From: Macrostomum lignano
Taxonomy: Eukaryota
NCBI GenBank assembly: GCA_002269645.1
Contig: NIVC01002868.1
Location: 1 to 64,000, forward strand
Reading direction: 5' to 3'
DNA length: 64,000 bases
Shown: one piece after another, positions 14,832-58,240 of the stretch
How the letters are laid out: each line of letters opens with the position of its first letter
Position numbering within the stretch: position 1 is the first letter of the stretch
Translations under genes and position numbers: made by a program
The notes under the pieces: generated by a model
The model's input: only the letters and a program-made list of their open reading frames with translations
The model's database searches: none
Told to the model about the DNA's origin: nothing

Positions 14832-16687
<1,856 letters not shown>

Positions 16688-36602: not shown

Positions 36603-36646
36603 AAATTAATATGACTGCACTTGGAATTTAATTGCAATTTTCTGTT

Positions 36647-39600
36647 ATGGCAGCAGCAGTTGCAGAAACAGCATTGGTTCCCACTGTGGCCACTCAACAG
36701 CAGCCACCAGCAGAAGATGCTCAACCAAAAGATGACTCAAATCTGTACTCATCTCGCCTGCCTCGAATGACCAAAGAGGAGCTCAAGCGAATCTGCAAAG
36801 AGCTCAAACTGTACCTGACCCCTCACCTGAATGACATTCTCTATCTGCACTATAAAGGCTATGCTCGCATCGAGAACCTGGAAGAGTACACCGGCCTTCG
36901 CTGCCTCTTCCTCGAGTGCAATGGAATTCGAAAATTAGAAAACCTGGACGCCCAGACAGAGATGCGCTGTCTTTACATGGCAAAAAATCTGGTTGAACGA
37001 ATTGAAAATCTTGACTCAATGGTCAACTTGGACACCATCGATTTGAGTCACAATAGTCTGGAACGCATTGAGAACTTGTCTAACTTGACTAAACTGACGA
37101 AAGTGATTTTGGCTCACAACAAAGTCTCCAGCATCGAAGATCTCAAAGGATTGCTGGATTGTCCATCGCTAACCGTGGTTGATTTGCAGCACAATAAAAT
37201 TGATGATGCTCAAGTTATTGATGAGATCTTTGTTAAGATGCCAAACCTGAGGGTGCTATACCTGCAGGGCAACCCAGTGGTCAAGCAGGTAAGGATTTTT
37301 GGTTTATCTTCTTTGACCCATCTATCTGTTTATCGTTCCGCGTGCAACTCCATCCCACCCGTCTTCCCAACTCTTTCCATCATCCAACCCATCCTCCCAT
37401 TCCCACCCGTCTCCCCATCCATTCCAACTTGTCTCCCCATCCTCTCCTATTCCCACCGTCTCCCCATCCATTCCAACTCGTCTCCCCATCCTCTCCCATT
37501 CCCACCCGTCTCCCCATCCTCTCCCATTCCAACTCGTCTCCCCATCCTCTCCCATTCCCACCCGTCTCCCCATCCTCCCATTCCCACCCGTCTCCCCATC
37601 CTCCCATTCCCACCCGTCTCCCCATCCTCCCATTCCCACCCGTCTCCCCATCCTCCCATTCCCACCCGTCTCCCCATCCTCCCATTCCCACCCGTCTCCC
37701 CATCCTCCCATTCCCACCCGTCTCCCCATCCTCCCATTCCCACCCGTCTCCCCATCCTCCCATTCCCACTCGTTTCCCCATCCTCCCATTCCCACCCGTC
37801 TCCCCATCCTCCCATTCCCACCCGTCTCCCCATCCTCCCATTCCCACTCGTTTCCCCATCCTCCCATTCCCACCCGTCTCCCCATCCTCCCATTCCCACT
37901 CGTTTCCCCATCCTCCCATTCCCACCCGTCTCCCCATCCTCTCCCATTCCCACCCGTCTCCCTATCCTCTCCCATTCCAACTCGTCTTCCCATCCTCTCC
38001 CATTCCAACTCGTCTCCCCATCCTCCCATTCCCACCCGTCTCCCCATCCTCCCATTCCCACCCGTCTCCCCATCCTCCCATTCCCACCCGTCTCCCCATC
38101 CTCCCATTCCCACCCGTCTCCCCATCCTCCCATTCCCACCCGTCTCCCCATCCTCCCATTCCCACCCGTCTCCCCATCCTCCCATTCCCACCCGTCTCCC
38201 CATCCTCCCATTCCCACTCGTTTCCCCATCCTCCCATTCCCACCCGTCTCCCCATCCTCCCATTCCCACTCGTTTCCCCATCCTCTCCCATTCCCACCCG
38301 TCTCCCCATCCTCTCCCATTCCCACCCGTCTCCCTATCCTCTCCCATTCCAACTCGTCTTCCCATCCTCTCCCTTTCCAACTCGTCTCCCCATCCTCTCC
38401 CATTCCCACCCGTCTCCCCATCCTCCCATTCCCACCCGTCTCCCCATCCTCCCATTCCCACCCGTCTCCCCATCCTCCCATTCCCACTCGTTTCCCCATC
38501 CTCCCATTCCCACCCGTCTCCCCATCCTCCCATTCCCACTCGTTTCCCCATCCTCTCCCATTCCCACCCGTCTCCCCATCCTCCCATTCCCACTCGTTTC
38601 CCCATCCTCCCATTCCCACCCGTCTCCCCATCCTCCCATTCCCACTCGTTTCCCCATCCTCTCCCATTCCCACCCGTCTCCCCATCCTCTTATAATTTCT
38701 TCTTAACCTCCATCCTACCGGTCTACCCACAGCCTCTCTATCTGTTCCCAAAGAATCATATTTTACCCCCCCCCCTACATATCTACGAGCTAACACCTGA
38801 AATCCACCCCAATATTTACAGATAAAATTCTACCGCAAGACGCTGACCCACAAGCTGCCCAACCTCACTTACCTGGACGACCGTCCGGTGTTCCCCAACG
38901 ACAGGCGCTATGCTGAGGCCTACTTCTCCGGCGGGGCGGAAGCGGAACGAGCCGAACGGAAACTCGTGCAAGAAGAAGAGCAGCAAAAGACCATGGCTAG
39001 CGTGGAGTGGCTGCTAAGGAAGCGCCAGAAGAATGAAGTCGCCACCGCTCAGGTGGGGGACTTGAAACATCGAATCAGGATAATTGTGAAATCCATTTAA
39101 AAGTCACTAAAAACGTTAAAATGAGAATCATCCCCAAATCTCACCTGAGAATCGTCTAAATCTCACCTGGGAATCGTCCCCAACTATCACCTGAGAATCG
39201 TCCCCAAATCTAACCTGAGAATCGTCCCCAACTATCACCTGAGAATCGTCCCCAAATCTCACCTGAGAATCGTCCCCGAACTTCACCTGAGAATCGTCCC
39301 CGAACCTCACCTAAAATTCGTCCCCGAACCTCACCTGAGAATCTTCCCCAAATCTCACCTGAGTATTGTTCCCAAATCTTACCCGAGGATCGTCCCCAAA
39401 TTTCACCTGAGAATCGTCTCCATATCTCACCTGAGAATCGTCCCCAAATCTCACCTGAGAATCGTCTCTAAATCTCACATGAGAATCGTCTCCTAATCTC
39501 AACTAAGAATCTTCCCCAAATCTCACCTGAGAATCGTCCCCAAACCTCACCTGAGAATCGTCCTCAAATCTCACCTGAGAATCGTCTCTAAATCTCACCT

Positions 39601-40206
39601 GAGAATCGTCTCCTAATCTCACCTAAGAATCGTTCCTAAATCTACCTTCACCTGTCCTCATTGTACCCTCAGGCAAAGGCGGAGGCTGCCGCGGTGTCGC
39701 GAGGCGAAGACCCCGCCTCCGTGCCTCCCGTGGATCCCGCCAAGTGCGACTGGCTCTACGGCGATCACGTGACCTCCGACACCAACAGCGATGGCTTCGT
39801 TGACGTGATCGAAGCCGACCCACCCACCGGCGATGCCGGAGACGCCGTCGACAACCTGCCAATGATTGCTCCGCGTCAGAATGACGGCGGTGGAATTTTC
39901 TCCTCTGTCGCCAAGGATGCAGAAGAGCCGGCCGGGGATTCCAGCATCCTGTTGCTAGGCAACTCGCAGCCGTCTGAGGACAGGGATGCCGCTGCGCCCG
40001 CTGTGAAGAAATCTCCGCTGATTGTTGAACTGGATGACATTCAGCCGACTGTTGACGAGCAGATCAGCACCACCAAGGAGCCGGCGGCTGCTCCAGTTGA
40101 GAGCAGCTCGACGCTGTCGATGACTGAAATTCGCGACGCTCTCGAGGTGGCGGTGACTGCGGCAACTGAGGCTGCTAAAAGTCAGCTGGACGATGAGCTG
40201 GATTGA
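36647..40206 (+). CDS. DNAAF1: Dynein axonemal assembly factor 1 (LRRC50/ODA7), 468 aa, 3 exons
   Basis: Exons 36647-37288, 38822-39052, 39673-40206 (all phase 0). [52 protein letters not shown]22-type LRRs and [14 protein letters not shown] are diagnostic of DNAAF1. Confidence 0.93.
37370..38690. repeat. 26-bp minisatellite (CCCGTCTCCCCATCCTCCCATTCCCA)n in DNAAF1 intron 1
   Basis: About 50 tandem copies; source of the long Pro-rich and Gly-rich pseudo-ORFs. Confidence 0.95.
39125..39640. repeat. 24-bp minisatellite (GAGAATCGTCCCCAAATCTCACCT)n in DNAAF1 intron 2
   Basis: About 21 copies; the same unit recurs at 42625-43035. Confidence 0.95.
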
Positions 40207-40550
40207 TTTGTTGATTGATTAATTTATTGATTGATTTACTGATTATCGATTGATTGATTTATTGATTAGTTGATCGATTAATCGATTGATTTATTGATTA
40301 ATTTTTGATTTATTGATAAATTGATTAATTTATTGGTTGATTGATTAATTAATTGATAGACTGAATATGATCGATTGATCGATTGATTCATTAATTGATC
40401 GATCGATCGATATATTGATTAATTAAATTGTTGATTGATTAATTAATTGATCGATCGATTGGTTTATTGATTAAGTGGTTGATTGATTGATTGGTTGATT
40501 AATTGATTGACTGATTATGATCTATTGATTGATTGGTTGATTAATTTTCA
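40205..40550. repeat. Degenerate (GATT)n microsatellite starting at the DNAAF1 stop codon
   Basis: Read directly. Confidence 0.9.
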
Positions 40551-40999
40551 TATTCAAAAGTTATTGATTCAGACTGTGATTTTTTGTGTTTTTTTCTAAT
40601 TTCTTTAATTCCGTCCAAAAATGTGTGTGTGCTTTTTTAATATAAACTATTCGAAAAAAACAAGTGCACTGTTTAACTACTGTTCAGGGTGAGTTTAAGT
40701 AGTATGAGTATCGCTGGGATTCGCTAAATTTATTAATTATAATCGTTTTCTTTACTTTTTTAGTTTACCTATATTGTTTTTGTTTGATGGCAACGTTAAA
40801 AAATACACTCCAGCTTACTCACAGAGCCCTGTCTTTTTACGACAGGTTAAACAGCGAGTTGCTATCAGTGTTAGCGTTCTAGTGTGCATATAGCATTGCT
40901 TTTTTAGGAATTTAGCGTGGCAATATCAAATAGGTGCATTGTTATTCCCACCTCTACCTTATTTGGTCTCTGCCAAATCTATACCCGTCTAGCCCATCT

Positions 41000-41640
41000 A
41001 TAACTCCCCATCGACCTCAACTCCCAATATACCTCATCACCTCATCTACCCCGCCTCCTCATCTACCCCACATCCTCATCTACCCCACATCCTCATCTAC
41101 CCCACATCCTCATCTACCCCACATCCTCATCTACCCCACATCCTCATCTACCCCGCCTCCTCAACTACCCCACATCCTCATCTACCCCACATCCTCATCT
41201 ACCCCACATCCTCATCTACCCCACATCCTCATCTACCCCACATCCTCATCTACCCCACATCCTCATCTACCCCACATCCTCATCTACCCCACATCCTCAT
41301 CTACCCCACATCCTCATCTACCCCACATCCTCATCTACCCCACATCATCATCCACCCCACATCCTCATCTACCCCACATCCTCATCTACCCCACATCCTC
41401 ATCTACCCCACATCCTCATCTACCCCACATCCTCATCTACCCCACATCCTCATCTACCCCACATTATCTACCCCACATCCTCATCTACCCCACATCATCA
41501 TCTACCCCACATCCTCATCTACCCCACATCATCATCTACCCCACATCCTCATATATACCTCATAGATATACCTCATCTCCCCATCTACCCTACCTCCCCA
41601 TCTACCCCACCTTACTATCCACCCAATCTACCCCACTCCC
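41000..41640. repeat. 17-bp minisatellite (CCACATCCTCATCTACC)n between DNAAF1 and MRPL54
   Basis: About 35 copies. Confidence 0.95.
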
Positions 41641-41769
41641 CTCTACCCCACCCTGTTATCTACTATCTTATAAATCGTTTCTAACATAATGAATTATTAA
41701 AGTTTAAAGCCAACCAGCGACTTATAATGTTAGCTCAAATGACGCTATCATCCACCCGCTCTATTCCAG

Positions 41770-42345
41770 CATCCCTCGCTCGTCATCCTAAGCCGCCTGT
41801 CCCGGGCGCATCGGCTGCCATCCCGCCAGCCCCTAAGCCAGATTGTCCGCAGCTTCGCCGCCCCGCCTCCCGGAGGCGCCGCAGGCAAGAAGCTGAAAGG
41901 CAAAGGCGTGGCAGCGATCTCAACCAAGAAGGAGCACCCAGTGGAAACCGATGTCAACAAACTGGCTACTCACCTGTGCATCAACTACTACGTCGACGGA
42001 GAGTACATACCGTTGAAGCCGAAGGATTCTTACCCAGACTGGCTATTCGAGCTCAGCACGGAGATGGAGCCGCGACCTCTGGAAGATCTCGAGCCAGACT
42101 CCGAGATCTACTGGCGTCACGTGATTCAAGCTAAAATGAAAGACGTATTCAAGCTTGGCAAAATGGATGGCTGGATTAAACCGGACCATGTTCACGAGAC
42201 CAACCAGCTGGAGAGGTTCTATGGTGAAACCTATCACGAGGTGCTTAGTCACGAAGCCTCCAAAGTTGGATTGCCAACGAAATCTAGCAGTGCCGATCTG
42301 CTTGAACCTGCAGATGACAAGGCAGCAATCAAGCGTTTAACCTGA
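41770..42345 (+). CDS. MRPL54: Mitochondrial ribosomal protein L54 (mL54); no genomic in-frame start codon, 5' end placed at the splice acceptor
   Basis: Frame open from 41743 to TGA at 42345: HPSLVILSRLSRAHRLPSRQPLSQIVRSFAA...GKKLKGKG...VETDVNKLATHLCINYYVDGEYIPLKPKDSYPDWLFEL...LEDLEPDSEIYWR. This is colinear with MRPL54 (VxTDxxxL, LKPDxEYPxWLFE, LEELDP..YWR). Acceptor CTATTCCAG at 41761-41769. Confidence 0.85.
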   Translation, partial: HPSLVILSRLSRAHRLPSRQPLSQIVRSFAAPPPGGAAGKKLKGKGVAAISTKKEHPVETDVNKLATHLCINYYVDGEYIPLKPKDSYPDWLFELSTEMEPRPLEDLEPDSEIYWRHVIQAKMKDVFKLGKMDGWIKPDHVHETNQLERFYGETYHEVLSHEASKVGLPTKSSSADLLEPADDKAAIKRLT

Positions 42346-42624
42346 AACCCGATGCAGTCAGTATCTAACTCACTGATATCTGAAGTAGTCTTTGTTCATT
42401 CAATTGTCTGCAAGTATACTGTGCAATTAAAATATAACAGTTTCCAATTACAAGCTTTTGTCATCAATTACTTTTAGTAGTTCAGTTGTGTTGTAGAACA
42501 TTATAAATTTTATACACATGAAGTTTATAAACTTTTCAGCTTATTTTAATTGATTGTTGCTTCTAATCTATATGATAGTTTACAGAGAAACTTTCCAAAA
42601 ACCCACCTAAAAATCTAAGAAGCA

Positions 42625-43035: not shown

Positions 43036-43147
43036 TAACGTAGTTTTATGCTAGAAATATTCTTTGAAACTATTTTAAACTACTCAAATCTTTCTGGTCA
43101 GCAAACAAAATAAGCTTGTCAATTAGGTCAAAAACGAAAGGTTTGAA

Positions 43148-43840
43148 ATGTCTTCAGACTCGGCACCGAAGCAGTTATTAACAAAGTTTGTCGTGTCCCC
43201 ACTGACCGGACCGTCGCCCTACATCAAGCCCTACTGCGTTGATTTTGTGCTTGACGGTGTCAATCGCAAGTGGCACTGCATGCGCAACCATGATGCAGTG
43301 GTGATCATTGTGTACAACACAGACCGCAAAGCTCTAGTGTTAGTTCGCCAATTCAGACCAGCAACTTACTTGCAACGCTGTCTAGAGACTAACGGCGGCA
43401 AGCTGGAGTCGTTAATGTCAGTTGAGACTGCTCCGCCTTTGCCAGCAGAAGCTGGCGATGTACTGGAAGCCTGCGCTGGCATCGTTGACAAACCCGACAA
43501 GAGCTTGGCAGAAATTGCTGCGGAAGAAGTGCTGGAAGAGTGTGGCTATCGAGTTGAACCGGATAAACTTGAACTGGTTGGCTGCTGTCGGTCTGGTGTC
43601 GGGGTGTCTTCTGCTAAGCAGACAATCTACTATGCTGAGGTGTCAGATTCTGTGCAAGTCAGCGAAGGCGGTGGAAACGCTGCCGAAGGTGAACGCATTG
43701 AAGTTGTACACTGGCCTGTTGACCAGATCGACCAACTGTTGCTTGGAAGCGGTGGCACTAGCGGTAGTTGTAATGAAATTTACATTGGTCTGCAGTTCTG
43801 CCTTCTCTGGTTCAAGGTTAACAAGATGCAGTCATCGTAG
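43148..43840 (+). CDS. NUDT14: Nudix hydrolase, UDP-glucose pyrophosphatase NUDT14-like (230 aa, intronless)
   Basis: HDAVVIIVYN...LVLVRQFRPA and the variant Nudix box LEACAGIVDKPDKSLAEIAAEEVLEECGY, plus EGERIEVV, as in NUDT14. Confidence 0.88.
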   Translation: MSSDSAPKQLLTKFVVSPLTGPSPYIKPYCVDFVLDGVNRKWHCMRNHDAVVIIVYNTDRKALVLVRQFRPATYLQRCLETNGGKLESLMSVETAPPLPAEAGDVLEACAGIVDKPDKSLAEIAAEEVLEECGYRVEPDKLELVGCCRSGVGVSSAKQTIYYAEVSDSVQVSEGGGNAAEGERIEVVHWPVDQIDQLLLGSGGTSGSCNEIYIGLQFCLLWFKVNKMQSS

Positions 43841-44770: not shown

Positions 44771-44846
44771 TTCTAATTTTCTGTCTCCTTGGGGATCATA
44801 ATTAATTCATACATATCCCCTACTGGTGCATGCTCTCCCAGCAACC

Positions 44847-47800: not shown

Positions 47801-48768
47801 CCCCTGTCGCCTATTCATAAATCCGCCCCTGTCACTATCCATAAATCCGCCCCTATCACTATCCATAAATCCGCCCCTATCACTATTCATAAATCCGCCC
47901 CTGTCACTATCCATAAATCCGCCCCTATCACTATTCATAAATCCGCCCCTATCACTATCCATAAATCCGCCCCTGTCTCATCCATAAATCCGCCCCTGTC
48001 TCTGATCCATAAATCCGCCCCTATCACTATCCATAAATCCGCCCCTGTCACTATCCATAAATCCGCCCTGTCACCTCATTCATAAATCCACCCCTATCAC
48101 TATCCATAAATCCGCCCCTATCATAGTTTAGAAACAATTTCTATTCACTGTTTAAAAAATCCGCCCCTCTATCCGCCCCCCTTCCCAGGCGATCCGCCAG
48201 CCCACCATCCTGCAGCAGACTGGCTACCTTCAGGAGCGAGCCCTGGCCCTGGACAAGGACAACGCGGAACAAATCACCCGCATGGGTCACCAGCTGCTCA
48301 TGCAGGGCAAAGTTCGCGATGCCATCAAAACATTTCGCCGAGCTCTGGACCAGGATGAGAGCAGTGTGACCGCCCTGCAGGGCATAATCCGCTGCCAGCT
48401 GGCTGAAGACCTGCTGCAGGAGGCCGCCTCTCAGCTGGACTTCCTCAAAGAAGTTCAGAGCAGCCTGGGATCGACCGGGGTAAGTTGAGATTTCCATCCG
48501 CGATTCTAAAATTGCTTTTGAGTTTTCGCGTGCTCAGTTCGCTTTGATTAATTGACAAAATTTTCTCGTGTCGATTTCGCTGTTCGAACAGGATTCGAGC
48601 AAGGCGGATGAAGCGGTAACTGGATGCTGGCTGGCGATTGTTTGATGCCAGAGTGATTTTTTATTTTTGTTTTTTCCTCAATTGCGTGTCTTCTGCTTTT
48701 TTGTTGGGCAGCTCTAACTGCTTCTGTCTGTCTGTCTGTCTGTCTTTTAGTCTGTCTGTCTGTCTGTG

Positions 48769-48801
<33 letters not shown>

Positions 48802-48805
48802 TTTA

Positions 48806-48839
<34 letters not shown>

Positions 48840-48840
48840 G

Positions 48841-48892
<52 letters not shown>

Positions 48893-48929
48893 AGTCAGTC
48901 TGTCTGTCTGTCTGTCTGTCTGTCTTTTA

Positions 48930-48963
<34 letters not shown>

Positions 48964-48964
48964 G

Positions 48965-49008
<44 letters not shown>

Positions 49009-49032
49009 AGTCAGTCTGTCTGTCTGTCTGTA

Positions 49033-49064
<32 letters not shown>

Positions 49065-49092
49065 AGTCAGTCTGTCTGTCTGTCTGTCTGAC

Positions 49093-49159
<67 letters not shown>

Positions 49160-49160
49160 G

Positions 49161-49195
<35 letters not shown>

Positions 49196-49196
49196 G

Positions 49197-49251
<55 letters not shown>

Positions 49252-49252
49252 G

Positions 49253-49296
<44 letters not shown>

Positions 49297-49305
49297 AGTC
49301 AGTCA

Positions 49306-49374
<69 letters not shown>

Positions 49375-49376
49375 AC

Positions 49377-49425
<49 letters not shown>

Positions 49426-49444
49426 GGTTGTCTGTCTGTCTGTG

Positions 49445-49475
<31 letters not shown>

Positions 49476-49516
49476 GTGTCTGTCTGTCTGTCTGTCTGTG
49501 TGTCTGTCTGTCTGGC

Positions 49517-49569
<53 letters not shown>

Positions 49570-49572
49570 GTG

Positions 49573-49615
<43 letters not shown>

Positions 49616-49656
49616 GTGTCTGTCTGTCTGTGTGTCTGTCTGTCTGTCTATCTGTG

Positions 49657-49693
<37 letters not shown>

Positions 49694-49696
49694 GTG

Positions 49697-49763
<67 letters not shown>

Positions 49764-49816
49764 GTGTCTGTCTGTCTGTCTGTCTGTCTGTCTTTTAGTC
49801 TGTCTGTCTGTCTGTG

Positions 49817-49849
<33 letters not shown>

Positions 49850-49853
49850 TTTA

Positions 49854-49885
<32 letters not shown>

Positions 49886-52800
49886 GTTTGTCTGCCTGTC
49901 TCTCTGTCTGCCTGTGTGTCTATCCGCCTCTATCTCCTGCTTACTAACTGTGAACTGTCAGTTGCACAGAAGCATTCAGCAAGTGTCACACACTTTCATT
50001 AGCAAAATCATTCGACTCATAATATAACTTTTATTCAACGACAATTTTGCTTATTTACTCAGAATTTTTTCATGCTTTGAAGTTGTTTGGTGCTTTATTA
50101 AAATATAAAGTACATGTTGAATGCGGTGCAACTACTTATAGTAGCTTGCCTTTTTGCCTCTGATTCTTGTGGTTGTCAGTGGAACTTCAGTGTCACGTGA
50201 GACATTTTCATAAGTAATTTCCTCTTTTTTAAGTAATACTGTTAAGCTTTTTATTAACTAAATTAAGAAAAAATATTTGAATGCAATTTTTATTGACTAA
50301 TACTCGTAAAGAATAACCAACTACAGCTTCTGTTATTACGTGTTTACTCAAATTTCAGGACTCAGTCGCAAAGGTAATTATAGACAGAAAAATGCTCGTT
50401 TTAATCAGGTTGGGGGTCCTTGAAAAAGTGTTGTCTTCCTAATTGAGAGCGCTTAAATAAATAAATCATTTGCACAGTATATGTGTATTTTTCTACATCT
50501 TGTAGTACATTGTGTCCTGTTGCTTTTGTCTCTGTCCGCCTGTGTCTTCTTCCAGGTAGAAAATATTGCTATGTAAACTATCATAGAATTTGAAGTCTTT
50601 TTTGAAATTATTATGCCAGCCTGTGATCTATCATCATCTATGTTTCTCTTTTATAATTCTTAATTGTGTCATATTTTTACTAAATTACTTTAATTTTATA
50701 CTCTAATTCTATTTTTAAATACTTTGTTATTTTTTAAGGATCTGAGCTTTCTATTGGCTGTGCTGGCTAGAAAGCGAGGTGCTCCGCCTAATAAAATACT
50801 GGCTCACCTGGATGATGCAATTCAGCAGCATTTTGCCAGCTTCAAGGTGAGGCTTTAAATTTTAGAATGTACAGTCGCTGTTGAGAATTCCCTGGATTTA
50901 TAAGTGCACATAAGCAGTATTCCCTTGAATTTCCCAGTGTACTCGTACATTATAGGAATTCCCTGGGATTTCCCAGTGTACATTATAGGGATTTCCTTGG
51001 ATTTCCCAGTGTACATTATAGGAATTCCCTAGGATTTCCCTGTGTAAAGTTTAGGGATTCCACCACAGGATTTCCGGGTGTACGATATATGGGATTCCCT
51101 GGGACTTCAAAGTTGACAGTTATAAGAATTCCCTAGATTTCCCAGGGGAATTTCCCTGTATACAGTAGGGATTCCAGTGCGGAATTGCAGTGCGGAAATT
51201 AGCGTCAATTAGTCTTTTTAGGTCGTCATCAATTTTTTTATTTTACAGTCCCCTACTTGACATCCCCACCTGCAGGGCCTGGCTCTCGGCCCGGACTACT
51301 ATCACTCTCTCAACCCGGACTTCCTCATCCAACTGGTGCACGAGTATCTGGTCCACGCGCCTCAGAAGCCGTCGGCAGCTGGTGGCGGTCAAGTAATCGA
51401 TCCGGTTCTGCGCCGGTGCACCCAACTGCTGGACCCGCTGACCAGAGCAATGCCCGGTCTGCTGGAGGCTCTGTACCAGATGGCCAAGATCCGCTACCTG
51501 CTGGGTGACAATGAGTCAGCTCTGGCCAAGCTGGAGACTTGCATCGACAATGACCCGGCGTTCAGTGCCGCATTCCTGTTGAAAGCCCAGATCCTGGTGC
51601 ACCAGGGTAACCTGAGACTTGCCGAGCAGGCACTGGACAATGCACTGAGTCACAATTTCGAAGTTCGAGACTCGCCTCTGTATCATCTGACATTGGCCAG
51701 GGTGTTGAAAGGCCAGAAACGGCTTGATGAAGCTATCCAGAGTCTGCAAGCCGCTGTTAAACTGATTAGCAGTGCTCAGCAGGTAAACTAAATGAGAATA
51801 TGTGGTACTATTTAGCGTGAATGTAGCAGTAGCATAAGTGACTATTGTCAGCGATCTCTGCCCAGTTCATGTGTACTTACAGGGAATTCCCTAGCTTTCA
51901 TGCGTACACTAAGGAAATTCTCTACATTTATCTGCACAGTTGGGGACAGTTGGGGAATCCCTCAGAGTCATATGTACAGATAGGGTATCCAATTAGATTC
52001 ATGCATTTATGTACAGTAAAGGAATTCCCTAGATCCCAATGTACAGTGAGAGAATTCCCTTAGATTCCAATGTACAGTAAGGGGACCCCATTAGATCCAA
52101 ATGTACAGTAAGGGAATTCCCTAGCTTCAAATATACGGCGAGGGAATTTCCTTAGATTCAAAAAGTACAGTGAGGGAATTCCCTTAGATTCAAATGTACA
52201 GTGAGGGAATTCCCTAGATTCAAATGTACAGTGGGGAAATTCCCTTAGATTCAAATGTACAGTGGGGCAATTCCCTTAGATTCAAATGTACAGTAAGGCA
52301 ATTCCCTTAGATTCAAATGTACAGTAAGGCAATTCCCTTAGATTCAAATGTACAGTGAAGGAATTCCCCATAAATTCAAATATACATCAAAGGAATTCCG
52401 TAGCTACGCAATTAACCCCAGATTTTCCAGACTCCACTCAAGCATCATCATACCTATCTTAAATAAAATATCTCGCACCACTAGGCGGCCGCTAAGAAGG
52501 GCGCTCAGCAACAGCAGCAGCAGCAGTCGCAGCAATCTCAACAGATGACCAGCGCCGATAGACTCAGCGTCTACTTAGAGCTCGCCGAGGTGTACCGCCT
52601 CGCCGATCGGCCTCACGAAGCCACCAAAGTGCTGCAAGATGCTCAGAACGATTTCGCTGGCAGTCCTGAGGAGGTCCGCGTCACCATCAGCAACGCTGAC
52701 TTGGCCCTGCAGCGAGGCGACATTGAGATGGCGCTGGGCACCCTGCGGACCGTCACGCCTGACCAGGCCTACTTCACCGAGGCCAGGAAACGGATGGCTG

Positions 52801-55800: not shown

Positions 55801-55928
55801 CTCTGACTTCCAGCAGGAGGCCGTGTTCTGCATGGTGGAGATCTGCATCAATCCCGATAACAACACGCTGGGAGGGGAGCTGTTCGACTCCGGGTGAGCT
55901 GGGGGAGACAGCTGTCTGTCTGTCTGCC

Positions 55929-55981
<53 letters not shown>

Positions 55982-55992
55982 GCCTGCCTGCC

Positions 55993-56037
<45 letters not shown>

Positions 56038-56067
56038 GCCTGTCTGTCTGTCTGTCTGTCTGCCTGC

Positions 56068-56117
<50 letters not shown>

Positions 56118-56172
56118 GCCTGCCTGCCTGTCTGTCTGTCTGCCTGTCTGCCTGTCTGTCTGTCTGTCTGCC

Positions 56173-56233
<61 letters not shown>

Positions 56234-56284
56234 GTCTATCTGCTATCTATCTATCTGTCTATCTATCTATCTATCTGTCTATCA

Positions 56285-56320
<36 letters not shown>

Positions 56321-56321
56321 G

Positions 56322-56370
<49 letters not shown>

Positions 56371-56424
56371 ATATCTATCTATCTATTTATCTATCTGTCT
56401 ATCTATCTATCTATCTGTCTATCA

Positions 56425-56472
<48 letters not shown>

Positions 56473-56482
56473 GTCTATCTAC

Positions 56483-56520
<38 letters not shown>

Positions 56521-56561
56521 CTCTGTCTATCTATCTATCTACCTATCTATCTATTTATCTG

Positions 56562-56602
<41 letters not shown>

Positions 56603-56637
56603 ATATCTATCTATCTTTCTATCTATCTATCTATCTG

Positions 56638-56678
<41 letters not shown>

Positions 56679-58240
56679 ATATCTATCTATCTATCTATCT
56701 ATCTATCTGTCTATCTATCTATCCATCTATTCATCTATCTAATCTATCTATTCTAACCCCCAGCGACATGCCAGCCGGAGACGCAGAGTCCATGGGGCTG
56801 CGCACGGCGGAGCGCCTGCTGCACGAGTTGAAGCCCCGGAGCGGCCCGGGCGGCAACGCTGCTCGCCTTCGCGTGGAATACCTCAAAGCGATGGTGCTGG
56901 TGGCAGGCAAGCAGAAGGCAGGCGCTGACAAGGCCGTCCAGATCTTCAACCAGATGCTGAGCCAAGACAAACTGTACGTACCGGCCATCTACGGCCTGGC
57001 GGCAGCGCACATGGTGGCCAAGAACAGCGCCAAAGCTCGCAGCACACTGAAGCCGCTGGTCACGGTCACTTGGTCGCTTGAGTTTGCCGACGAGCTGGAG
57101 AAAGGCTGGCTGCTGCTGGCCGATATGAGTGTCCAGTCTGGCGGCAGCCGATCCGAAGGCGCCCAGGAGCTGCTGGCCAAGGTTCTGCAGCACAACAAGG
57201 CCTGCTACAAGGCCTACGAGTATTTGGGATTTCTAATGGAGAAGGAGCAGAACTACAAGGATGCGGCTAGGAATTATGAGCTGGCTTGGAGATATTCAAA
57301 TCAGACTAATCCGGCCATCGGATTCAAGCTGGCGTTCAACTATTTGAAGTCTAAGAAACTCGTGGAGGCTGTGGACATCTGCCACGTGGTGAGTTGCCGC
57401 CCTGCGGCTGCTGCGGGATAGGGGGAGATGCCGGTGCGGAGGGTTGAGGGACAAGTGGAGAAGGTAGGTTCGGAGGGTGTGGAGGGTAGAGTAGGAGGGT
57501 GTGGAGGGTAGGGTCGGAGGGTGTGAAGGGTAGAGTCGGAGGGTGAGGAGGGTAGAGTCGGAGGGTGTGGAGGGTAGGGTAGGAGGGTGTGGAGGGTAGA
57601 GTCGGAGGGTTTGGAGGGTAGGGTAGGAGGGTGTGGAGGGTAAGGTAGGAGGGTGTGGAGGGTAGAATCGGGGAGGGTGTGGAGGGTAAGGTAGGAGGGT
57701 GTGGAGGGTAAGGTAGGAGGGTGTGGAGGGTAGAATCGGGGAGAGTGTGGAGGGTAGAATCGGGGAGGGTGTGGAGGGTAGAGTCAGGGAGGGTGTGGAG
57801 GGTAGAGTCGGAGAGGGTGTGGAGGGTAGAGTCGGGGAGGGTGTGGAGGGTAGAGTCAGGGAGGGTGTGGAGGGTAGAGTCAGGGAGGGTGTGGAGGGTA
57901 GAGTTGGAGAGGGTGTGGAGGGTAGAGTCGGTGGGTATGGAGGGTAGGGTAGGAGGGTGTGGAGGGTAGAGTCGGAGAGGGTGTGGAGGGTAGAGTCGGA
58001 GAGGGTGTGGAGGGTAGAGTCAGGGAGGGTGTGGAGGGTAGAGTCGGAGAGGGTGTGGAGGGTAGAGTCGGTGGGTGACTCGGAGGACATGGATGGTGTG
58101 GAGGGTCCAAATCTACTCAAACTAACTAACCTATAAAACCTGTTTCTGCTCCCCCACCGCAGGTACTCAAGAACCACCCGACTTATCCGAAGATCAAGAA
58201 GGAAATTCTTGACAAAGCCAGACAGCAGATCCGAGCTTGA
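44847..58240 (+). CDS. TTC21B: IFT-A subunit IFT139 / TTC21B, 1315 aa, 12 exons
   Basis: Exons 44847-45278, 45898-46275, 47334-47432, 48189-48479, 50739-50846, 51276-51782, 52485-52823, 53839-54342, 54920-55194, 55582-55893, 56764-57388, 58163-58240; all GT-AG with phases consistent, 3948 nt. Many TPRs; diagnostic [49 protein letters not shown] and C-terminal [16 protein letters not shown]. Confidence 0.95.
45360..45810. repeat. ~17-18-bp minisatellite (GAGTACATGATCCTTAA)n, TTC21B intron 1
   Basis: Degenerate tandem copies. Confidence 0.9.
46290..47225. repeat. 27-bp minisatellite (CTTGGGATTTCCATGTAGTTTAGGAAT)n, TTC21B intron 2
   Basis: About 34 copies. Confidence 0.93.
47770..48125. repeat. 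24-bp minisatellite (ATAAATCCGCCCCTATCACTATCC)n, TTC21B intron 3
   Basis: About 14 copies. Confidence 0.93.
48722..49910. repeat. (TCTG)n microsatellite, ~1.2 kb, TTC21B intron 4
   Basis: Read directly. Confidence 0.97.
50885..51180. repeat. ~33-bp degenerate minisatellite (TTTCCCAGTGTACATTATAGGGATTTCCTTGGA), TTC21B intron 5
   Basis: Several degenerate copies. Confidence 0.8.
51930..52390. repeat. 30-31-bp minisatellite (GTACAGTGAGGGAATTCCCTTAGATTCAAAT)n, TTC21B intron 6
   Basis: About 13 copies. Confidence 0.9.
52835..53815. repeat. 21-bp minisatellite (TTATCTAGAATCTTGTCAGAC)n, TTC21B intron 7
   Basis: About 45 copies. Confidence 0.95.
54633..54880 (+). mobile_element. 5'-truncated SINE copy in TTC21B intron 8
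   Basis: High similarity by eye to 10740-11010. Confidence 0.75.
55205..55565. repeat. 26-bp minisatellite (CACAAAAATCCCTAAATCCCCAGATT)n, TTC21B intron 9
   Basis: About 13 copies. Confidence 0.93.
55912..56745. repeat. Compound (TCTG)n then (TCTA)n microsatellite, TTC21B intron 10
   Basis: Read directly; the switch is near 56215. Confidence 0.97.
57470..58100. repeat. G-rich 22-24-bp minisatellite (GGAGGGTAGAGTCGGAGAGGGTGT)n, TTC21B intron 11
   Basis: Tandem copies read directly. Confidence 0.93.

What the first reader, a model, noticed from the sequence alone, without database searches (positions are those of the whole stretch)
41727..42345. MRPL54 has no in-frame ATG and probably starts from the spliced-leader AUG
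The MRPL54 frame is closed upstream by TGA (41740-41742), and its first ATG (42064) lies after the conserved LKPxxxYPDWLFE core. A good acceptor CTATTCCAG (41761-41769) sits exactly in frame before CAT CCC TCG, and the peptide that follows (HPSLVILSRLSRAHRLPSRQPLSQIVRSF) looks like a mitochondrial presequence lacking only its Met. Flatworm spliced leaders end in AUG, which is known to be usable as the initiator. Trans-splicing here would give M-HPSLV..., 192 aa, making an essential gene untranslatable without the SL. The nearest strong cis donor (GTGAGT at 40689) would not supply an ATG, because TAA lies in frame at 40674-40676.
Basis: partly seen in the sequence, partly recalled or inferred. 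Interest (0 to 1): 0.85.

Follow-up and report, generated by a model that had tools for sequence, protein, structure and literature searches.

The report
Flatworm mL54 gene started by spliced-leader AUG
This Macrostomum lignano gene for mitochondrial ribosomal protein mL54 has no usable start codon of its own and almost certainly borrows the AUG at the end of the trans-spliced leader, a mechanism already known in flatworms, so it is a sound but unsurprising example.

Summary
The window is Macrostomum lignano (Mlig_3_7, contig NIVC01002868.1). The mL54 frame is closed by TGA at 41740-41742. It stays open from the acceptor TTCCAG|CAT (41769|41770) to TGA at 42343-42345. Its first genomic in-frame ATG (42064) lies after the conserved core.

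The M. lignano spliced leader (SL) ends in ...TTGCATG, and TTCCAG fits its published trans-splice acceptor motif. On two paralogous contigs NCBI annotates the same gene as a 191-aa "partial" protein that starts exactly at this CAT.

The three copies differ at the codon before CAT: CAG, CTG and ATG. Every variant base equals the SL tail. The same pattern appears at four more trans-splice acceptors nearby, but at none of the cis acceptors checked. The assembly was Pilon-polished with RNA-seq, so these are most likely imprints of SL-bearing reads, which is indirect evidence for the SL-ATG|CATCCC junction.

With the SL AUG the protein is 192 aa. Its 30-residue, acid-free presequence ends in the R-x-F/Y-A motif shared with mL54 homologues.

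Use of the SL AUG as initiator is known (Cheng 2006, Schistosoma). A second gene in this window (TTC1-like) does the same.

The main rival is public fusion models that cis-splice DNAAF1 to the same acceptor.

The parts
41761..41769 (+). Trans-splice acceptor ctaTTCCAG. The outron ends at 41769.
   Evidence: Matches the M. lignano trans-splice motif [T/C]TNCAG (PMC8629364). The paralogues read CTG and ATG here, which are SL-tail bases.
41770..42345 (+). mL54 (MRPL54) coding exon: 191 genomic codons plus TGA. With the SL AUG the protein is 192 aa (M-HPSLVILSRLS...KRLT).
   Evidence: NCBI 'partial' proteins PAA67849.1 and PAA67655.1 start at the same base on the paralogous contigs.
41770..41856 (+). 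Predicted mitochondrial presequence (HPSLVILSRLSRAHRLPSRQPLSQIVRSF) ending in R-S-F|A-A.
   Evidence: The first 30 residues, counting the SL-encoded Met, hold 5 Arg and no Asp/Glu (first acidic residue at 56). The R-x-F/Y-A motif aligns with other mL54 proteins, and GC jumps from 0.38 to 0.69 at 41770.
41848..42126 (+). Conserved mL54 core (RSFAAPPP...YPDWLFE...YWRHVI).
   Evidence: phmmer alignment to human mL54 (3j9m_l), query residues 27-119, E=8e-14.
41740..41742 (+). In-frame TGA that closes the mL54 frame upstream, inside the outron.
   Evidence: Conserved in all three copies.
41727..41741 (+). Two out-of-frame ATGs (41727, 41739) in the outron, heading a 135-codon ORF with no homologue.
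   Evidence: ATG 41727 is ATA in copy L003.
42064..42066 (+). First genomic in-frame ATG. It would give a 93-aa protein lacking the conserved core.
41951..41953 (+). The only other AUG between the SL AUG and 42064 in the mature mRNA. Out of frame, 21-codon ORF.
42426..42431 (+). ATTAAA, a candidate poly(A) signal 80 nt after the stop.
   Evidence: sequence only.
40147..40152 (+). Weak cis donor GTGGCG after codon GAG, inside the last DNAAF1 exon. Public fusion models use it to join, in frame, to 41770.
   Evidence: UniProt A0A1I8J7K7 and A0A1I8G661 read ...IRDALE|HPSLV.... The donor is conserved in three copies.
36647..40206 (+). Upstream gene DNAAF1 (3 exons). The likely trans-splice junction lies just before 36645.
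40201..41610 (.). DNAAF1-mL54 spacer, largely tandem repeats: (GATT)n at 40201-40546 and a 17-mer array at 41040-41610.
   Evidence: The repeat-adjusted spacer is about 646 nt, under the 1-kb operon criterion of PMC8629364.
43097..43840 (+). Downstream gene NUDT14. The window copy reads tttcTG|gtcagc at the trans-splice junction 43096|43097, where the paralogues have CAG.

Best explanation
The gene is Macrostomum lignano mL54, an internal member of a same-strand cluster (DNAAF1, mL54, NUDT14, TTC21B) that is probably transcribed as a polycistronic unit.

Proposed mechanism:
1. The pre-mRNA is SL trans-spliced at 41769|41770.
2. This places the 35-nt leader CGGTCTCTTACTGCGAAGACTCAATTTATTGCATG directly in front of CAT CCC TCG.
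3. The leader's 3'-terminal AUG (nt 33-35 of the mature mRNA) is in frame and is the first AUG. It starts a 192-aa protein, M-HPSLVILSRLSRAHRLPSRQPLSQIVRSF|AAPPP....
4. The first ~30 residues act as a cleavable mitochondrial presequence.
5. The mature protein then joins the mitoribosomal large subunit.

Shown here: the gene's identity, the closed frame, the lack of a genomic AUG, the acceptor motif, the in-frame geometry, and the agreement of the annotated 5' ends.

Inferred: that SL-bearing reads abut this junction (from the annotation and from polishing imprints), that ribosomes start at the SL AUG, and the presequence cleavage.
For: - Organism and SL. The adjacent NUDT14 is an exact match to contig NIVC01002868.1 of GCA_002269645.1. 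The SL sequence and acceptor motif come from PMC8629364.
- Annotated 5' ends. TBONE sets 5' ends from SL-trimmed reads. The mL54 CDS starts at exactly the CAT on L001 (8278) and L003 (10001), and both are flagged 'partial'.
- SL imprints. Pilon polishing used RNA-seq. Across 5 trans-splice junctions in 3 copies, only 3 of 15 keep AG, and every deviating base equals the SL tail ...GCATG. The window's TTC21B junction reads GCATG in full. In contrast, 9 of 9 cis acceptors keep AG (Fisher p=3e-4). L003 literally reads ttcATG|CATCCC.
- Start codon geometry. In the predicted mRNA the SL AUG is first and in frame. The next AUG is out of frame, and the next in-frame one is codon 100.
- N-terminus. Its length and the R-x-F/Y-A motif match human, cestode, nematode and other mL54 proteins. 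There is no acidic residue before position 56.
- Precedent. More than 40 S. mansoni cDNAs need the SL AUG (Cheng 2006, via PMC9851317). Macrostomum workers themselves call the final ATG of the SL a translation start codon (PMC10468722).
Against: - No read, cDNA or peptide was seen directly. Look-ups of the 191-aa product, and of that product with an added N-terminal Met, found nothing, and a metagenome scan for the SL-exon junction found nothing.
- The gene is not annotated on this contig at all.
- TBONE 5' ends are not perfectly consistent between copies for TTC21B and the TTC1-like gene. They are offset by a few to about 23 nt.
- The SL AUG has a weak Kozak-type context (U at -3, C at +4).
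- Public models join the same acceptor in cis to DNAAF1.
- If the ATG in copy L003 is real rather than a polishing imprint, at least one copy would not need the SL AUG.
Confidence: 0.78

Rival explanations
1. Cis-spliced fusion. The exon is joined to the donor at 40146|40147 in the last DNAAF1 exon, so the DNAAF1 ATG (36647) supplies initiation and mL54 is made as the C-terminal part of a DNAAF1-mL54 protein.
For: Two UniProt models (A0A1I8J7K7 and A0A1I8G661, 613 aa) read ...[10 protein letters not shown]|HPSLV..., in frame, at exactly this acceptor. The donor GT is conserved in three copies. Sharing of acceptors between cis- and trans-splicing is reported in parasitic flatworms (PMC12582326).
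Against: The donor GTGGCG does not fit the species consensus GT[G/A]AG. The later, SL-aware Mlig_3_7 annotation gives DNAAF1 its own stop (468 aa) and a separate mL54. A mitochondrial presequence buried behind 446 residues of a cytosolic dynein assembly factor could not direct import. The fusion models stop short of the mL54 stop codon. The in-frame join has a 1-in-3 chance.
Confidence: 0.07
2. Non-AUG initiation. Translation starts at a near-cognate codon in the open frame (for example CUG 41797 or 41815, or AUC 41785), with or without trans-splicing.
For: Several in-frame near-cognate codons lie between the TGA and the conserved core. One paralogue reads CTG directly before CAT.
Against: In the trans-spliced mRNA an in-frame AUG lies upstream of all of them. 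Their contexts are poor (C or G at -3, mostly pyrimidine at +4). The CTG in L001 fits the polishing imprint pattern. Starting at 41797 or later would shorten or remove the presequence.
Confidence: 0.05
3. Real copy-to-copy variation. The ATG in contig NIVC01001464.1 (L003, ttcATG|cat) is genuine, so that copy makes mL54 from a genomic AUG. The window copy is then a redundant or decaying homeologue.
For: L003 has an in-frame ATG exactly before CAT. M. lignano DV1 carries duplicated chromosomes, so redundancy exists.
Against: The same CAG to CTG/ATG/GCATG changes occur at four other trans-splice junctions and at no cis acceptor. The assembly was polished with RNA-seq. The annotated L003 CDS excludes that ATG and is 'partial'. 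Without an AG, L003 would need an upstream 5' end that contains an out-of-frame AUG (the 41739 equivalent). All three copies keep intact ORFs.
Confidence: 0.05
4. Assembly error or truncated protein. Either an indel hides an in-frame ATG (41727 or 41739), or translation starts at ATG 42064.
For: PacBio-based assemblies can carry indels. ATG 42064 has a good context (G at -3, G at +4).
Against: Three independent copies share the same spacing, and ATG 41727 is ATA in L003. The ORF from ATG 41727 has no homologue. A start at 42064 removes the presequence and the conserved LKP..YPDWLFE core.
Confidence: 0.02

Closest known systems
Schistosoma mansoni mRNAs that use the SL 3'-terminal AUG as initiator methionine (Cheng, Cohen, Ndegwa and Davis 2006, J Biol Chem 281:733; summarised in PMC9851317)
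   Same: A flatworm SL ending in AUG is spliced directly in frame onto an ORF that has no genomic start codon. The ORF is a conserved housekeeping protein.
   Different: The species is different: a free-living macrostomorph with a single 35-nt SL. No experimental proof of initiation exists here. The gene sits inside a likely operon.
slORFs (SL-created ORFs) found with slORFfinder in nematodes, Oikopleura and trypanosomes (PMC9851317)
   Same: The start codon is supplied by the leader rather than by the gene.
   Different: Those cases mostly use near-cognate NUG codons inside the SL and create extensions or new ORFs. Here a canonical AUG at the very end of the SL starts the main conserved ORF.
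mL54 / MRPL54 of the mitoribosomal large subunit (human 3j9m chain l; Mesocestoides corti A0A0R3U647)
   Same: The core (VETD..KL...C.NY...G..IPLKP..EYPDWLF...P.PLEDL.P.S..YWR) is conserved, as is an N-terminal presequence ending in R-x-F/Y-A.
   Different: The homologues examined begin with a methionine in their public sequences. The Macrostomum protein has a longer C-terminal tail (MDGWIKPDH...ERFYGETYH...), shared only with the other flatworm sequences.
Downstream genes of SL-resolved operons in M. lignano (Ustyantsev and Berezikov 2021, PMC8629364)
   Same: Neighbours lie on the same strand, repeat-adjusted spacers are under 1 kb, and the gene start carries a [T/C]TNCAG acceptor.
   Different: That paper does not discuss use of the SL AUG as a start codon. 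Co-transcription is only inferred here.

Membership tests
mL54 (MRPL54; Pfam PF08561 Ribosomal_L37) | Significant sequence similarity to mL54 chains of solved mitoribosomes | tested here: met
   Human 3j9m_l E=7.9e-14. Two further mL54 chains (9e9c_l, 4v1a_q) match at about 1e-13.
mL54 (MRPL54; Pfam PF08561 Ribosomal_L37) | Score above Pfam's gathering threshold for PF08561 | tested here: inconclusive
   17.2 bits against a cutoff of 21, over 33 residues only. The family's short, divergent model misses it, whereas direct comparisons do not (Toxocara 6e-11; Mesocestoides 2.6e-24).
mL54 (MRPL54; Pfam PF08561 Ribosomal_L37) | Conserved core motifs (VETD, C-x-NY, LKP-x3-YP-x-WL, YW) | tested here: met
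   Invariant columns E60, D62, C71, N73, Y89, P90, W92, L93, W116 in an 8-sequence alignment.
mL54 (MRPL54; Pfam PF08561 Ribosomal_L37) | N-terminal mitochondrial presequence | tested here: met
   With the SL Met: 30 residues, 5 Arg, 0 Asp/Glu, and R-S-F|A-A aligned to R-x-F/Y-A in the homologues. Import was not tested.
Flatworm SL-AUG-initiated genes (Cheng et al. 2006) | The organism's SL ends in AUG | tested here: met
   The window is M. lignano. Its SL is ...TTGCATG (PMC8629364).
Flatworm SL-AUG-initiated genes (Cheng et al. 2006) | The mRNA is SL trans-spliced at the acceptor in question | tested here: met
   The evidence is indirect. The acceptor motif is present. The SL-read-based annotation starts at this base on two paralogous contigs. 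SL-tail imprints are found at the junction. No read was seen directly.
Flatworm SL-AUG-initiated genes (Cheng et al. 2006) | The SL AUG is in frame with the conserved ORF, with no intervening stop | tested here: met
   ATG|CAT CCC ... gives a 192-aa ORF.
Flatworm SL-AUG-initiated genes (Cheng et al. 2006) | No genomic in-frame AUG upstream of the conserved domain | tested here: met
   TGA at 41740 and first ATG at 42064. The same holds in the paralogues once the imprint is set aside.
Flatworm SL-AUG-initiated genes (Cheng et al. 2006) | Translation shown to start at the SL AUG | not testable with these tools
   This needs Ribo-seq, reporter assays or in-vitro translation.
M. lignano SL-resolved operon (PMC8629364 criterion) | Same-strand neighbours, a trans-spliced downstream gene, and a repeat-adjusted spacer under 1 kb | tested here: met
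   Spacers of 1563, 751 and 992 nt become about 646, 334 and 304 nt after removing tandem repeats.
M. lignano SL-resolved operon (PMC8629364 criterion) | A polycistronic precursor transcript spanning the genes | tested here: inconclusive
   There are only hints. DNAAF1 (window) and mL54 (L003) share the transcript-cluster prefix Mlig007820, and fusion gene models exist.

The most novel reading that the evidence does not exclude
Every genomic copy of mL54 in M. lignano truly lacks a start codon. Mitoribosome assembly would then depend strictly on SL trans-splicing and on translation from the TMG-capped leader AUG. Together with other SL-AUG genes such as the TTC1-like gene, this would form a sizeable, so far unannotated class of 'partial' genes in this species. 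It could couple mitochondrial biogenesis to trans-splicing activity in neoblasts.
Probability: 0.3. Interest if true: 0.5.

Novelty: new member of a known kind. Interest (0 to 1): 0.3.

Why it matters
It adds a clean example, in a free-living model flatworm with transgenesis, of an essential-type housekeeping gene whose start codon is supplied only by the spliced leader. It also explains why NCBI lists this protein as "partial" on two contigs and not at all on this one.

More practically, the check uncovered that the Mlig_3_7 assembly appears to carry SL-tail bases written over the last 1-5 nt of outrons. This destroys AG acceptors and creates spurious genomic ATGs. It affects motif statistics (only 9,551 of 21,754 trans-splice sites showed the CAG motif in PMC8629364), start-codon calls and any promoter or 5'-end design that uses this assembly.

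The biology itself has been known since 2006.

Tried and rejected
- Rfam scan of the window: no family at gathering score.
- No SL RNA gene lies in the window. TGCATG is not enriched overall.
- The protein homology search for mL54 missed the M. lignano paralogues. Their 90% cluster is represented by DNAAF1, because of the fusion models.
- Exact-product look-ups of the 191-aa product and of that product with an added N-terminal Met found no transcript contig.
- A metagenome scan for the SL-exon junction TTGCATGCATCCCTCGCTCGTC found nothing.
- Rejected: an assembly indel (three copies agree).
- Rejected: the strong donor at 40689 (in-frame TAA).
- Rejected: the ATG-41727 ORF (no homologue, and ATA in L003).
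- Other in-frame acceptors at 41829|41830 and 41841|41842 exist. They have poorer motifs and no annotation support.
- Parsimony on CAG/CTG/ATG as real evolution would make a non-acceptor, non-AUG CTG ancestral. This was rejected in favour of the polishing imprint.

Full report
**Observation**

The sequence is as described.
- In the mL54 frame, TGA sits at 41740-41742 and the frame is open from 41743 to the stop at 42343-42345.
- ctattccAG ends at 41769 and CAT CCC TCG begins at 41770 in frame.
- ATG 41727 and ATG 41739 are in another frame.
- The first in-frame genomic ATG is 42064, after LKPKDSYPDWLFE.
- The strong donor GTGAGT at 40689 is indeed preceded by an in-frame TAA at 40674-40676.

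**Identity of gene and organism**

The 191-aa translation matches:
- human mL54 of solved mitoribosomes (3j9m chain l, E=7.9e-14, query 27-119 to human 33-122);
- Toxocara MRPL54;
- in an exhaustive search, 165 proteins, led by mL54 of the cestode Mesocestoides corti and a monogenean sequence.

Pfam PF08561 is hit only below threshold.

The neighbouring NUDT14 gene (43148-43840) is an exact product of contig NIVC01002868.1 of the Macrostomum lignano assembly Mlig_3_7 (GCA_002269645.1). Window coordinates equal contig coordinates. The organism is therefore a flatworm.

Its single spliced leader (SL) is CGGTCTCTTACTGCGAAGACTCAATTTATTGCATG. The enriched motif at trans-splice acceptors is [T/C]TNCAG (PMC8629364). 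TTCCAG at 41764-41769 fits this motif.

**Paralogous copies and the public annotation**

Two further assembled copies of the locus exist: L001 on NIVC01001448.1 and L003 on NIVC01001464.1. On both, NCBI carries a 191-aa protein flagged "partial" (PAA67849.1, PAA67655.1). Its first codon is exactly the CAT equivalent to 41770. On the window's own contig the gene is not annotated at all.

The annotation pipeline (TBONE) cuts transcriptional units at peaks of SL-trimmed RNA-seq reads, and TransDecoder then calls ORFs (PMC5730564). A CDS that opens at the very base after the acceptor, on two contigs, therefore places the mature 5' end within 0-2 nt of 41770.

**An unexpected line of evidence**

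The codon before CAT differs in the three copies: CAG (window), CTG (L001) and ATG (L003). Both variants change towards the SL tail ...GCATG. The same pattern occurs at the likely trans-splice junctions of the neighbouring genes.

| Gene | Junction | Window | L001 | L003 |
|---|---|---|---|---|
| DNAAF1 | before 36645 | ttttCTG | ttttCTG | tttCATG |
| mL54 | 41769\|41770 | ttcCAG | ttcCTG | ttcATG |
| NUDT14 | 43096\|43097 | CTG | CAG | CAG |
| TTC21B | 44832\|44833 | gtGCATG | ttGATG | ttGCTG |
| TTC1-like (minus strand) | 16682\|16681 | aaTGCATG | aaTGCATG | aaTGCATG |

- Eight of 20 columns at -5..-1 vary, against 44 of 460 in the flanks (p=5e-4). Every variable column contains the SL base.
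- Only 3 of 15 trans-splice site copies keep AG. In contrast, 9 of 9 cis acceptors in DNAAF1 and the TTC1-like gene keep it (Fisher p=3e-4).
- The assembly was polished with Pilon using RNA-seq mapped by STAR as well as DNA reads.

The simplest reading is that SL-bearing reads overhanging the junction were aligned with mismatches and "corrected" the genome. If so, the CTG and ATG are not evolution. It would also explain why only 9,551 of 21,754 trans-splice regions showed the CAG motif.

**Start codon**

In the predicted mature mRNA the SL AUG (nt 33-35) is the first AUG and opens a 192-aa ORF. The next AUG (41951) is out of frame with a 21-codon ORF, and the next in-frame AUG is 42064.

With the SL Met, the N-terminus MHPSLVILSRLSRAHRLPSRQPLSQIVRSF|AAPPP has 5 Arg and no acidic residue before position 56. 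It ends in R-S-F-A, which aligns with R-x-F/Y-A in cestode, nematode and other metazoan mL54 sequences and in the human protein. This is the classical R-2/R-3 processing motif, stated here from established knowledge. The distance from the start is similar to that in the homologues. GC content jumps from 0.38 to 0.69 exactly at 41770.

Use of the SL AUG as initiator methionine is established in Schistosoma. There it is in frame in 28% of trans-spliced transcripts and required by more than 40 cDNAs (Cheng et al. 2006, via PMC9851317). All flatworm SLs share the terminal AUG (PMC12582326). Macrostomum genome authors already call it a translation start codon (PMC10468722).

**Context**

DNAAF1, mL54, NUDT14 and TTC21B lie on the same strand. 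After subtracting tandem repeats, the spacers between them are about 646, 334 and 304 nt. These are below the 1-kb operon criterion of PMC8629364. A position inside an operon would make trans-splicing of mL54 obligatory.

On the other three genes the SL AUG opens only short or out-of-frame ORFs of 42, 10 and 29 codons.

The TTC1-like gene on the minus strand behaves like mL54:
- there is an in-frame TAA two codons upstream of the junction;
- all three NCBI proteins are "partial" and begin at D or Q;
- the first internal Met is at residue 135.

Two of five trans-spliced genes in this window therefore depend on the SL AUG, so the phenomenon is probably common.

**Rivals**

- Fusion models. Two UniProt models (613 aa) join DNAAF1 ...IRDALE to HPSLV... 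through a weak donor GAG|GTGGCG at 40146|40147 and this same acceptor, in frame. I rate it low as the functional route. The donor is off-consensus. The SL-aware annotation separates the genes. A presequence behind 446 residues could not act in import. Such transcripts may still exist as a minor form.
- Non-AUG starts, a genuine ATG in L003, an indel and a start at 42064 are each unlikely, for the reasons given in the Rival explanations section.

**Limits**

- No read, cDNA, footprint or peptide was seen.
- TBONE ends are offset between copies for two other genes.
- The polishing imprint is an inference from pattern plus the published methods.
- Initiation at the SL AUG rests on precedent.

**Verdict**

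This is a new member of a known kind, of modest interest. The technical by-product, SL imprints in Mlig_3_7, may be the more useful result.

Noticed in passing
window 36642-36644, 41767-41769 (intact), 43094-43096, 44828-44832, 16682-16687 (minus strand); L001 2658-2660, 8275-8277, 11750-11754; L003 4966-4969, 9998-10000, 13448-13452: At trans-splice junctions the last 1-5 outron bases are replaced by SL-tail bases (..GCATG) in most assembled copies. This destroys the AG and sometimes creates a genomic ATG, while cis acceptors stay intact. It is most likely a Pilon polishing artefact from SL-bearing RNA-seq reads in Mlig_3_7.
   Followed up: yes
window 15815-16684, minus strand (junction 16682|16681): A TTC1-like TPR gene is a second candidate for dependence on the SL AUG. 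The sequence reads ttaaTGCATG|GATTCT, with an in-frame TAA two codons upstream. All three NCBI proteins (PAA54710.1, PAA67852.1, PAA67652.1) are 'partial', and the first internal Met is at residue 135. The ATG at 16684-16682 is probably an SL imprint rather than genomic.
   Followed up: partly
window 36645-57421, plus strand: DNAAF1, mL54, NUDT14 and TTC21B (IFT139) form a same-strand cluster. Their spacers are mostly minisatellites: (GATT)n plus 17-mer, 24-mer and 20/40-mer arrays. Repeat-adjusted spacers are about 300-650 nt, which suggests a four-gene operon.
   Followed up: partly
window 41770-42345: mL54 is not annotated on this contig in the NCBI record, although the two paralogous contigs carry it as a 'partial' protein.
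   Followed up: partly
window 40146|40147 joined to 41770: UniProt A0A1I8J7K7 and A0A1I8G661 are DNAAF1-mL54 fusion models (613 aa). They also cause the 90% protein cluster of mL54 to be represented by DNAAF1, which hid the M. lignano mL54 paralogues from the homology search.
   Followed up: partly
window 42150-42342: The mL54 C-terminal extension (MDGWIKPDH..ERFYGETYHEVL...) is shared with the cestode, monogenean and one unnamed sequence, but not with the insect, nematode or mammalian mL54 proteins.
   Followed up: no
window 44846/44847 vs L001 11769-11779 and L003 equivalent: There is an 11-nt indel (GGACAGCAACC, a direct duplication) in the TTC21B 5' leader between copies. The annotated TTC21B CDS starts are offset from the junction by +23 (window), +4 (L001) and +1 (L003).
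   Followed up: no
window 37300-38800, 40934-41689, 48600-50000, 55900-57000: Long minisatellite arrays in introns and spacers generate long spurious ORFs on both strands (up to 687 codons). These should not be read as genes.
   Followed up: no
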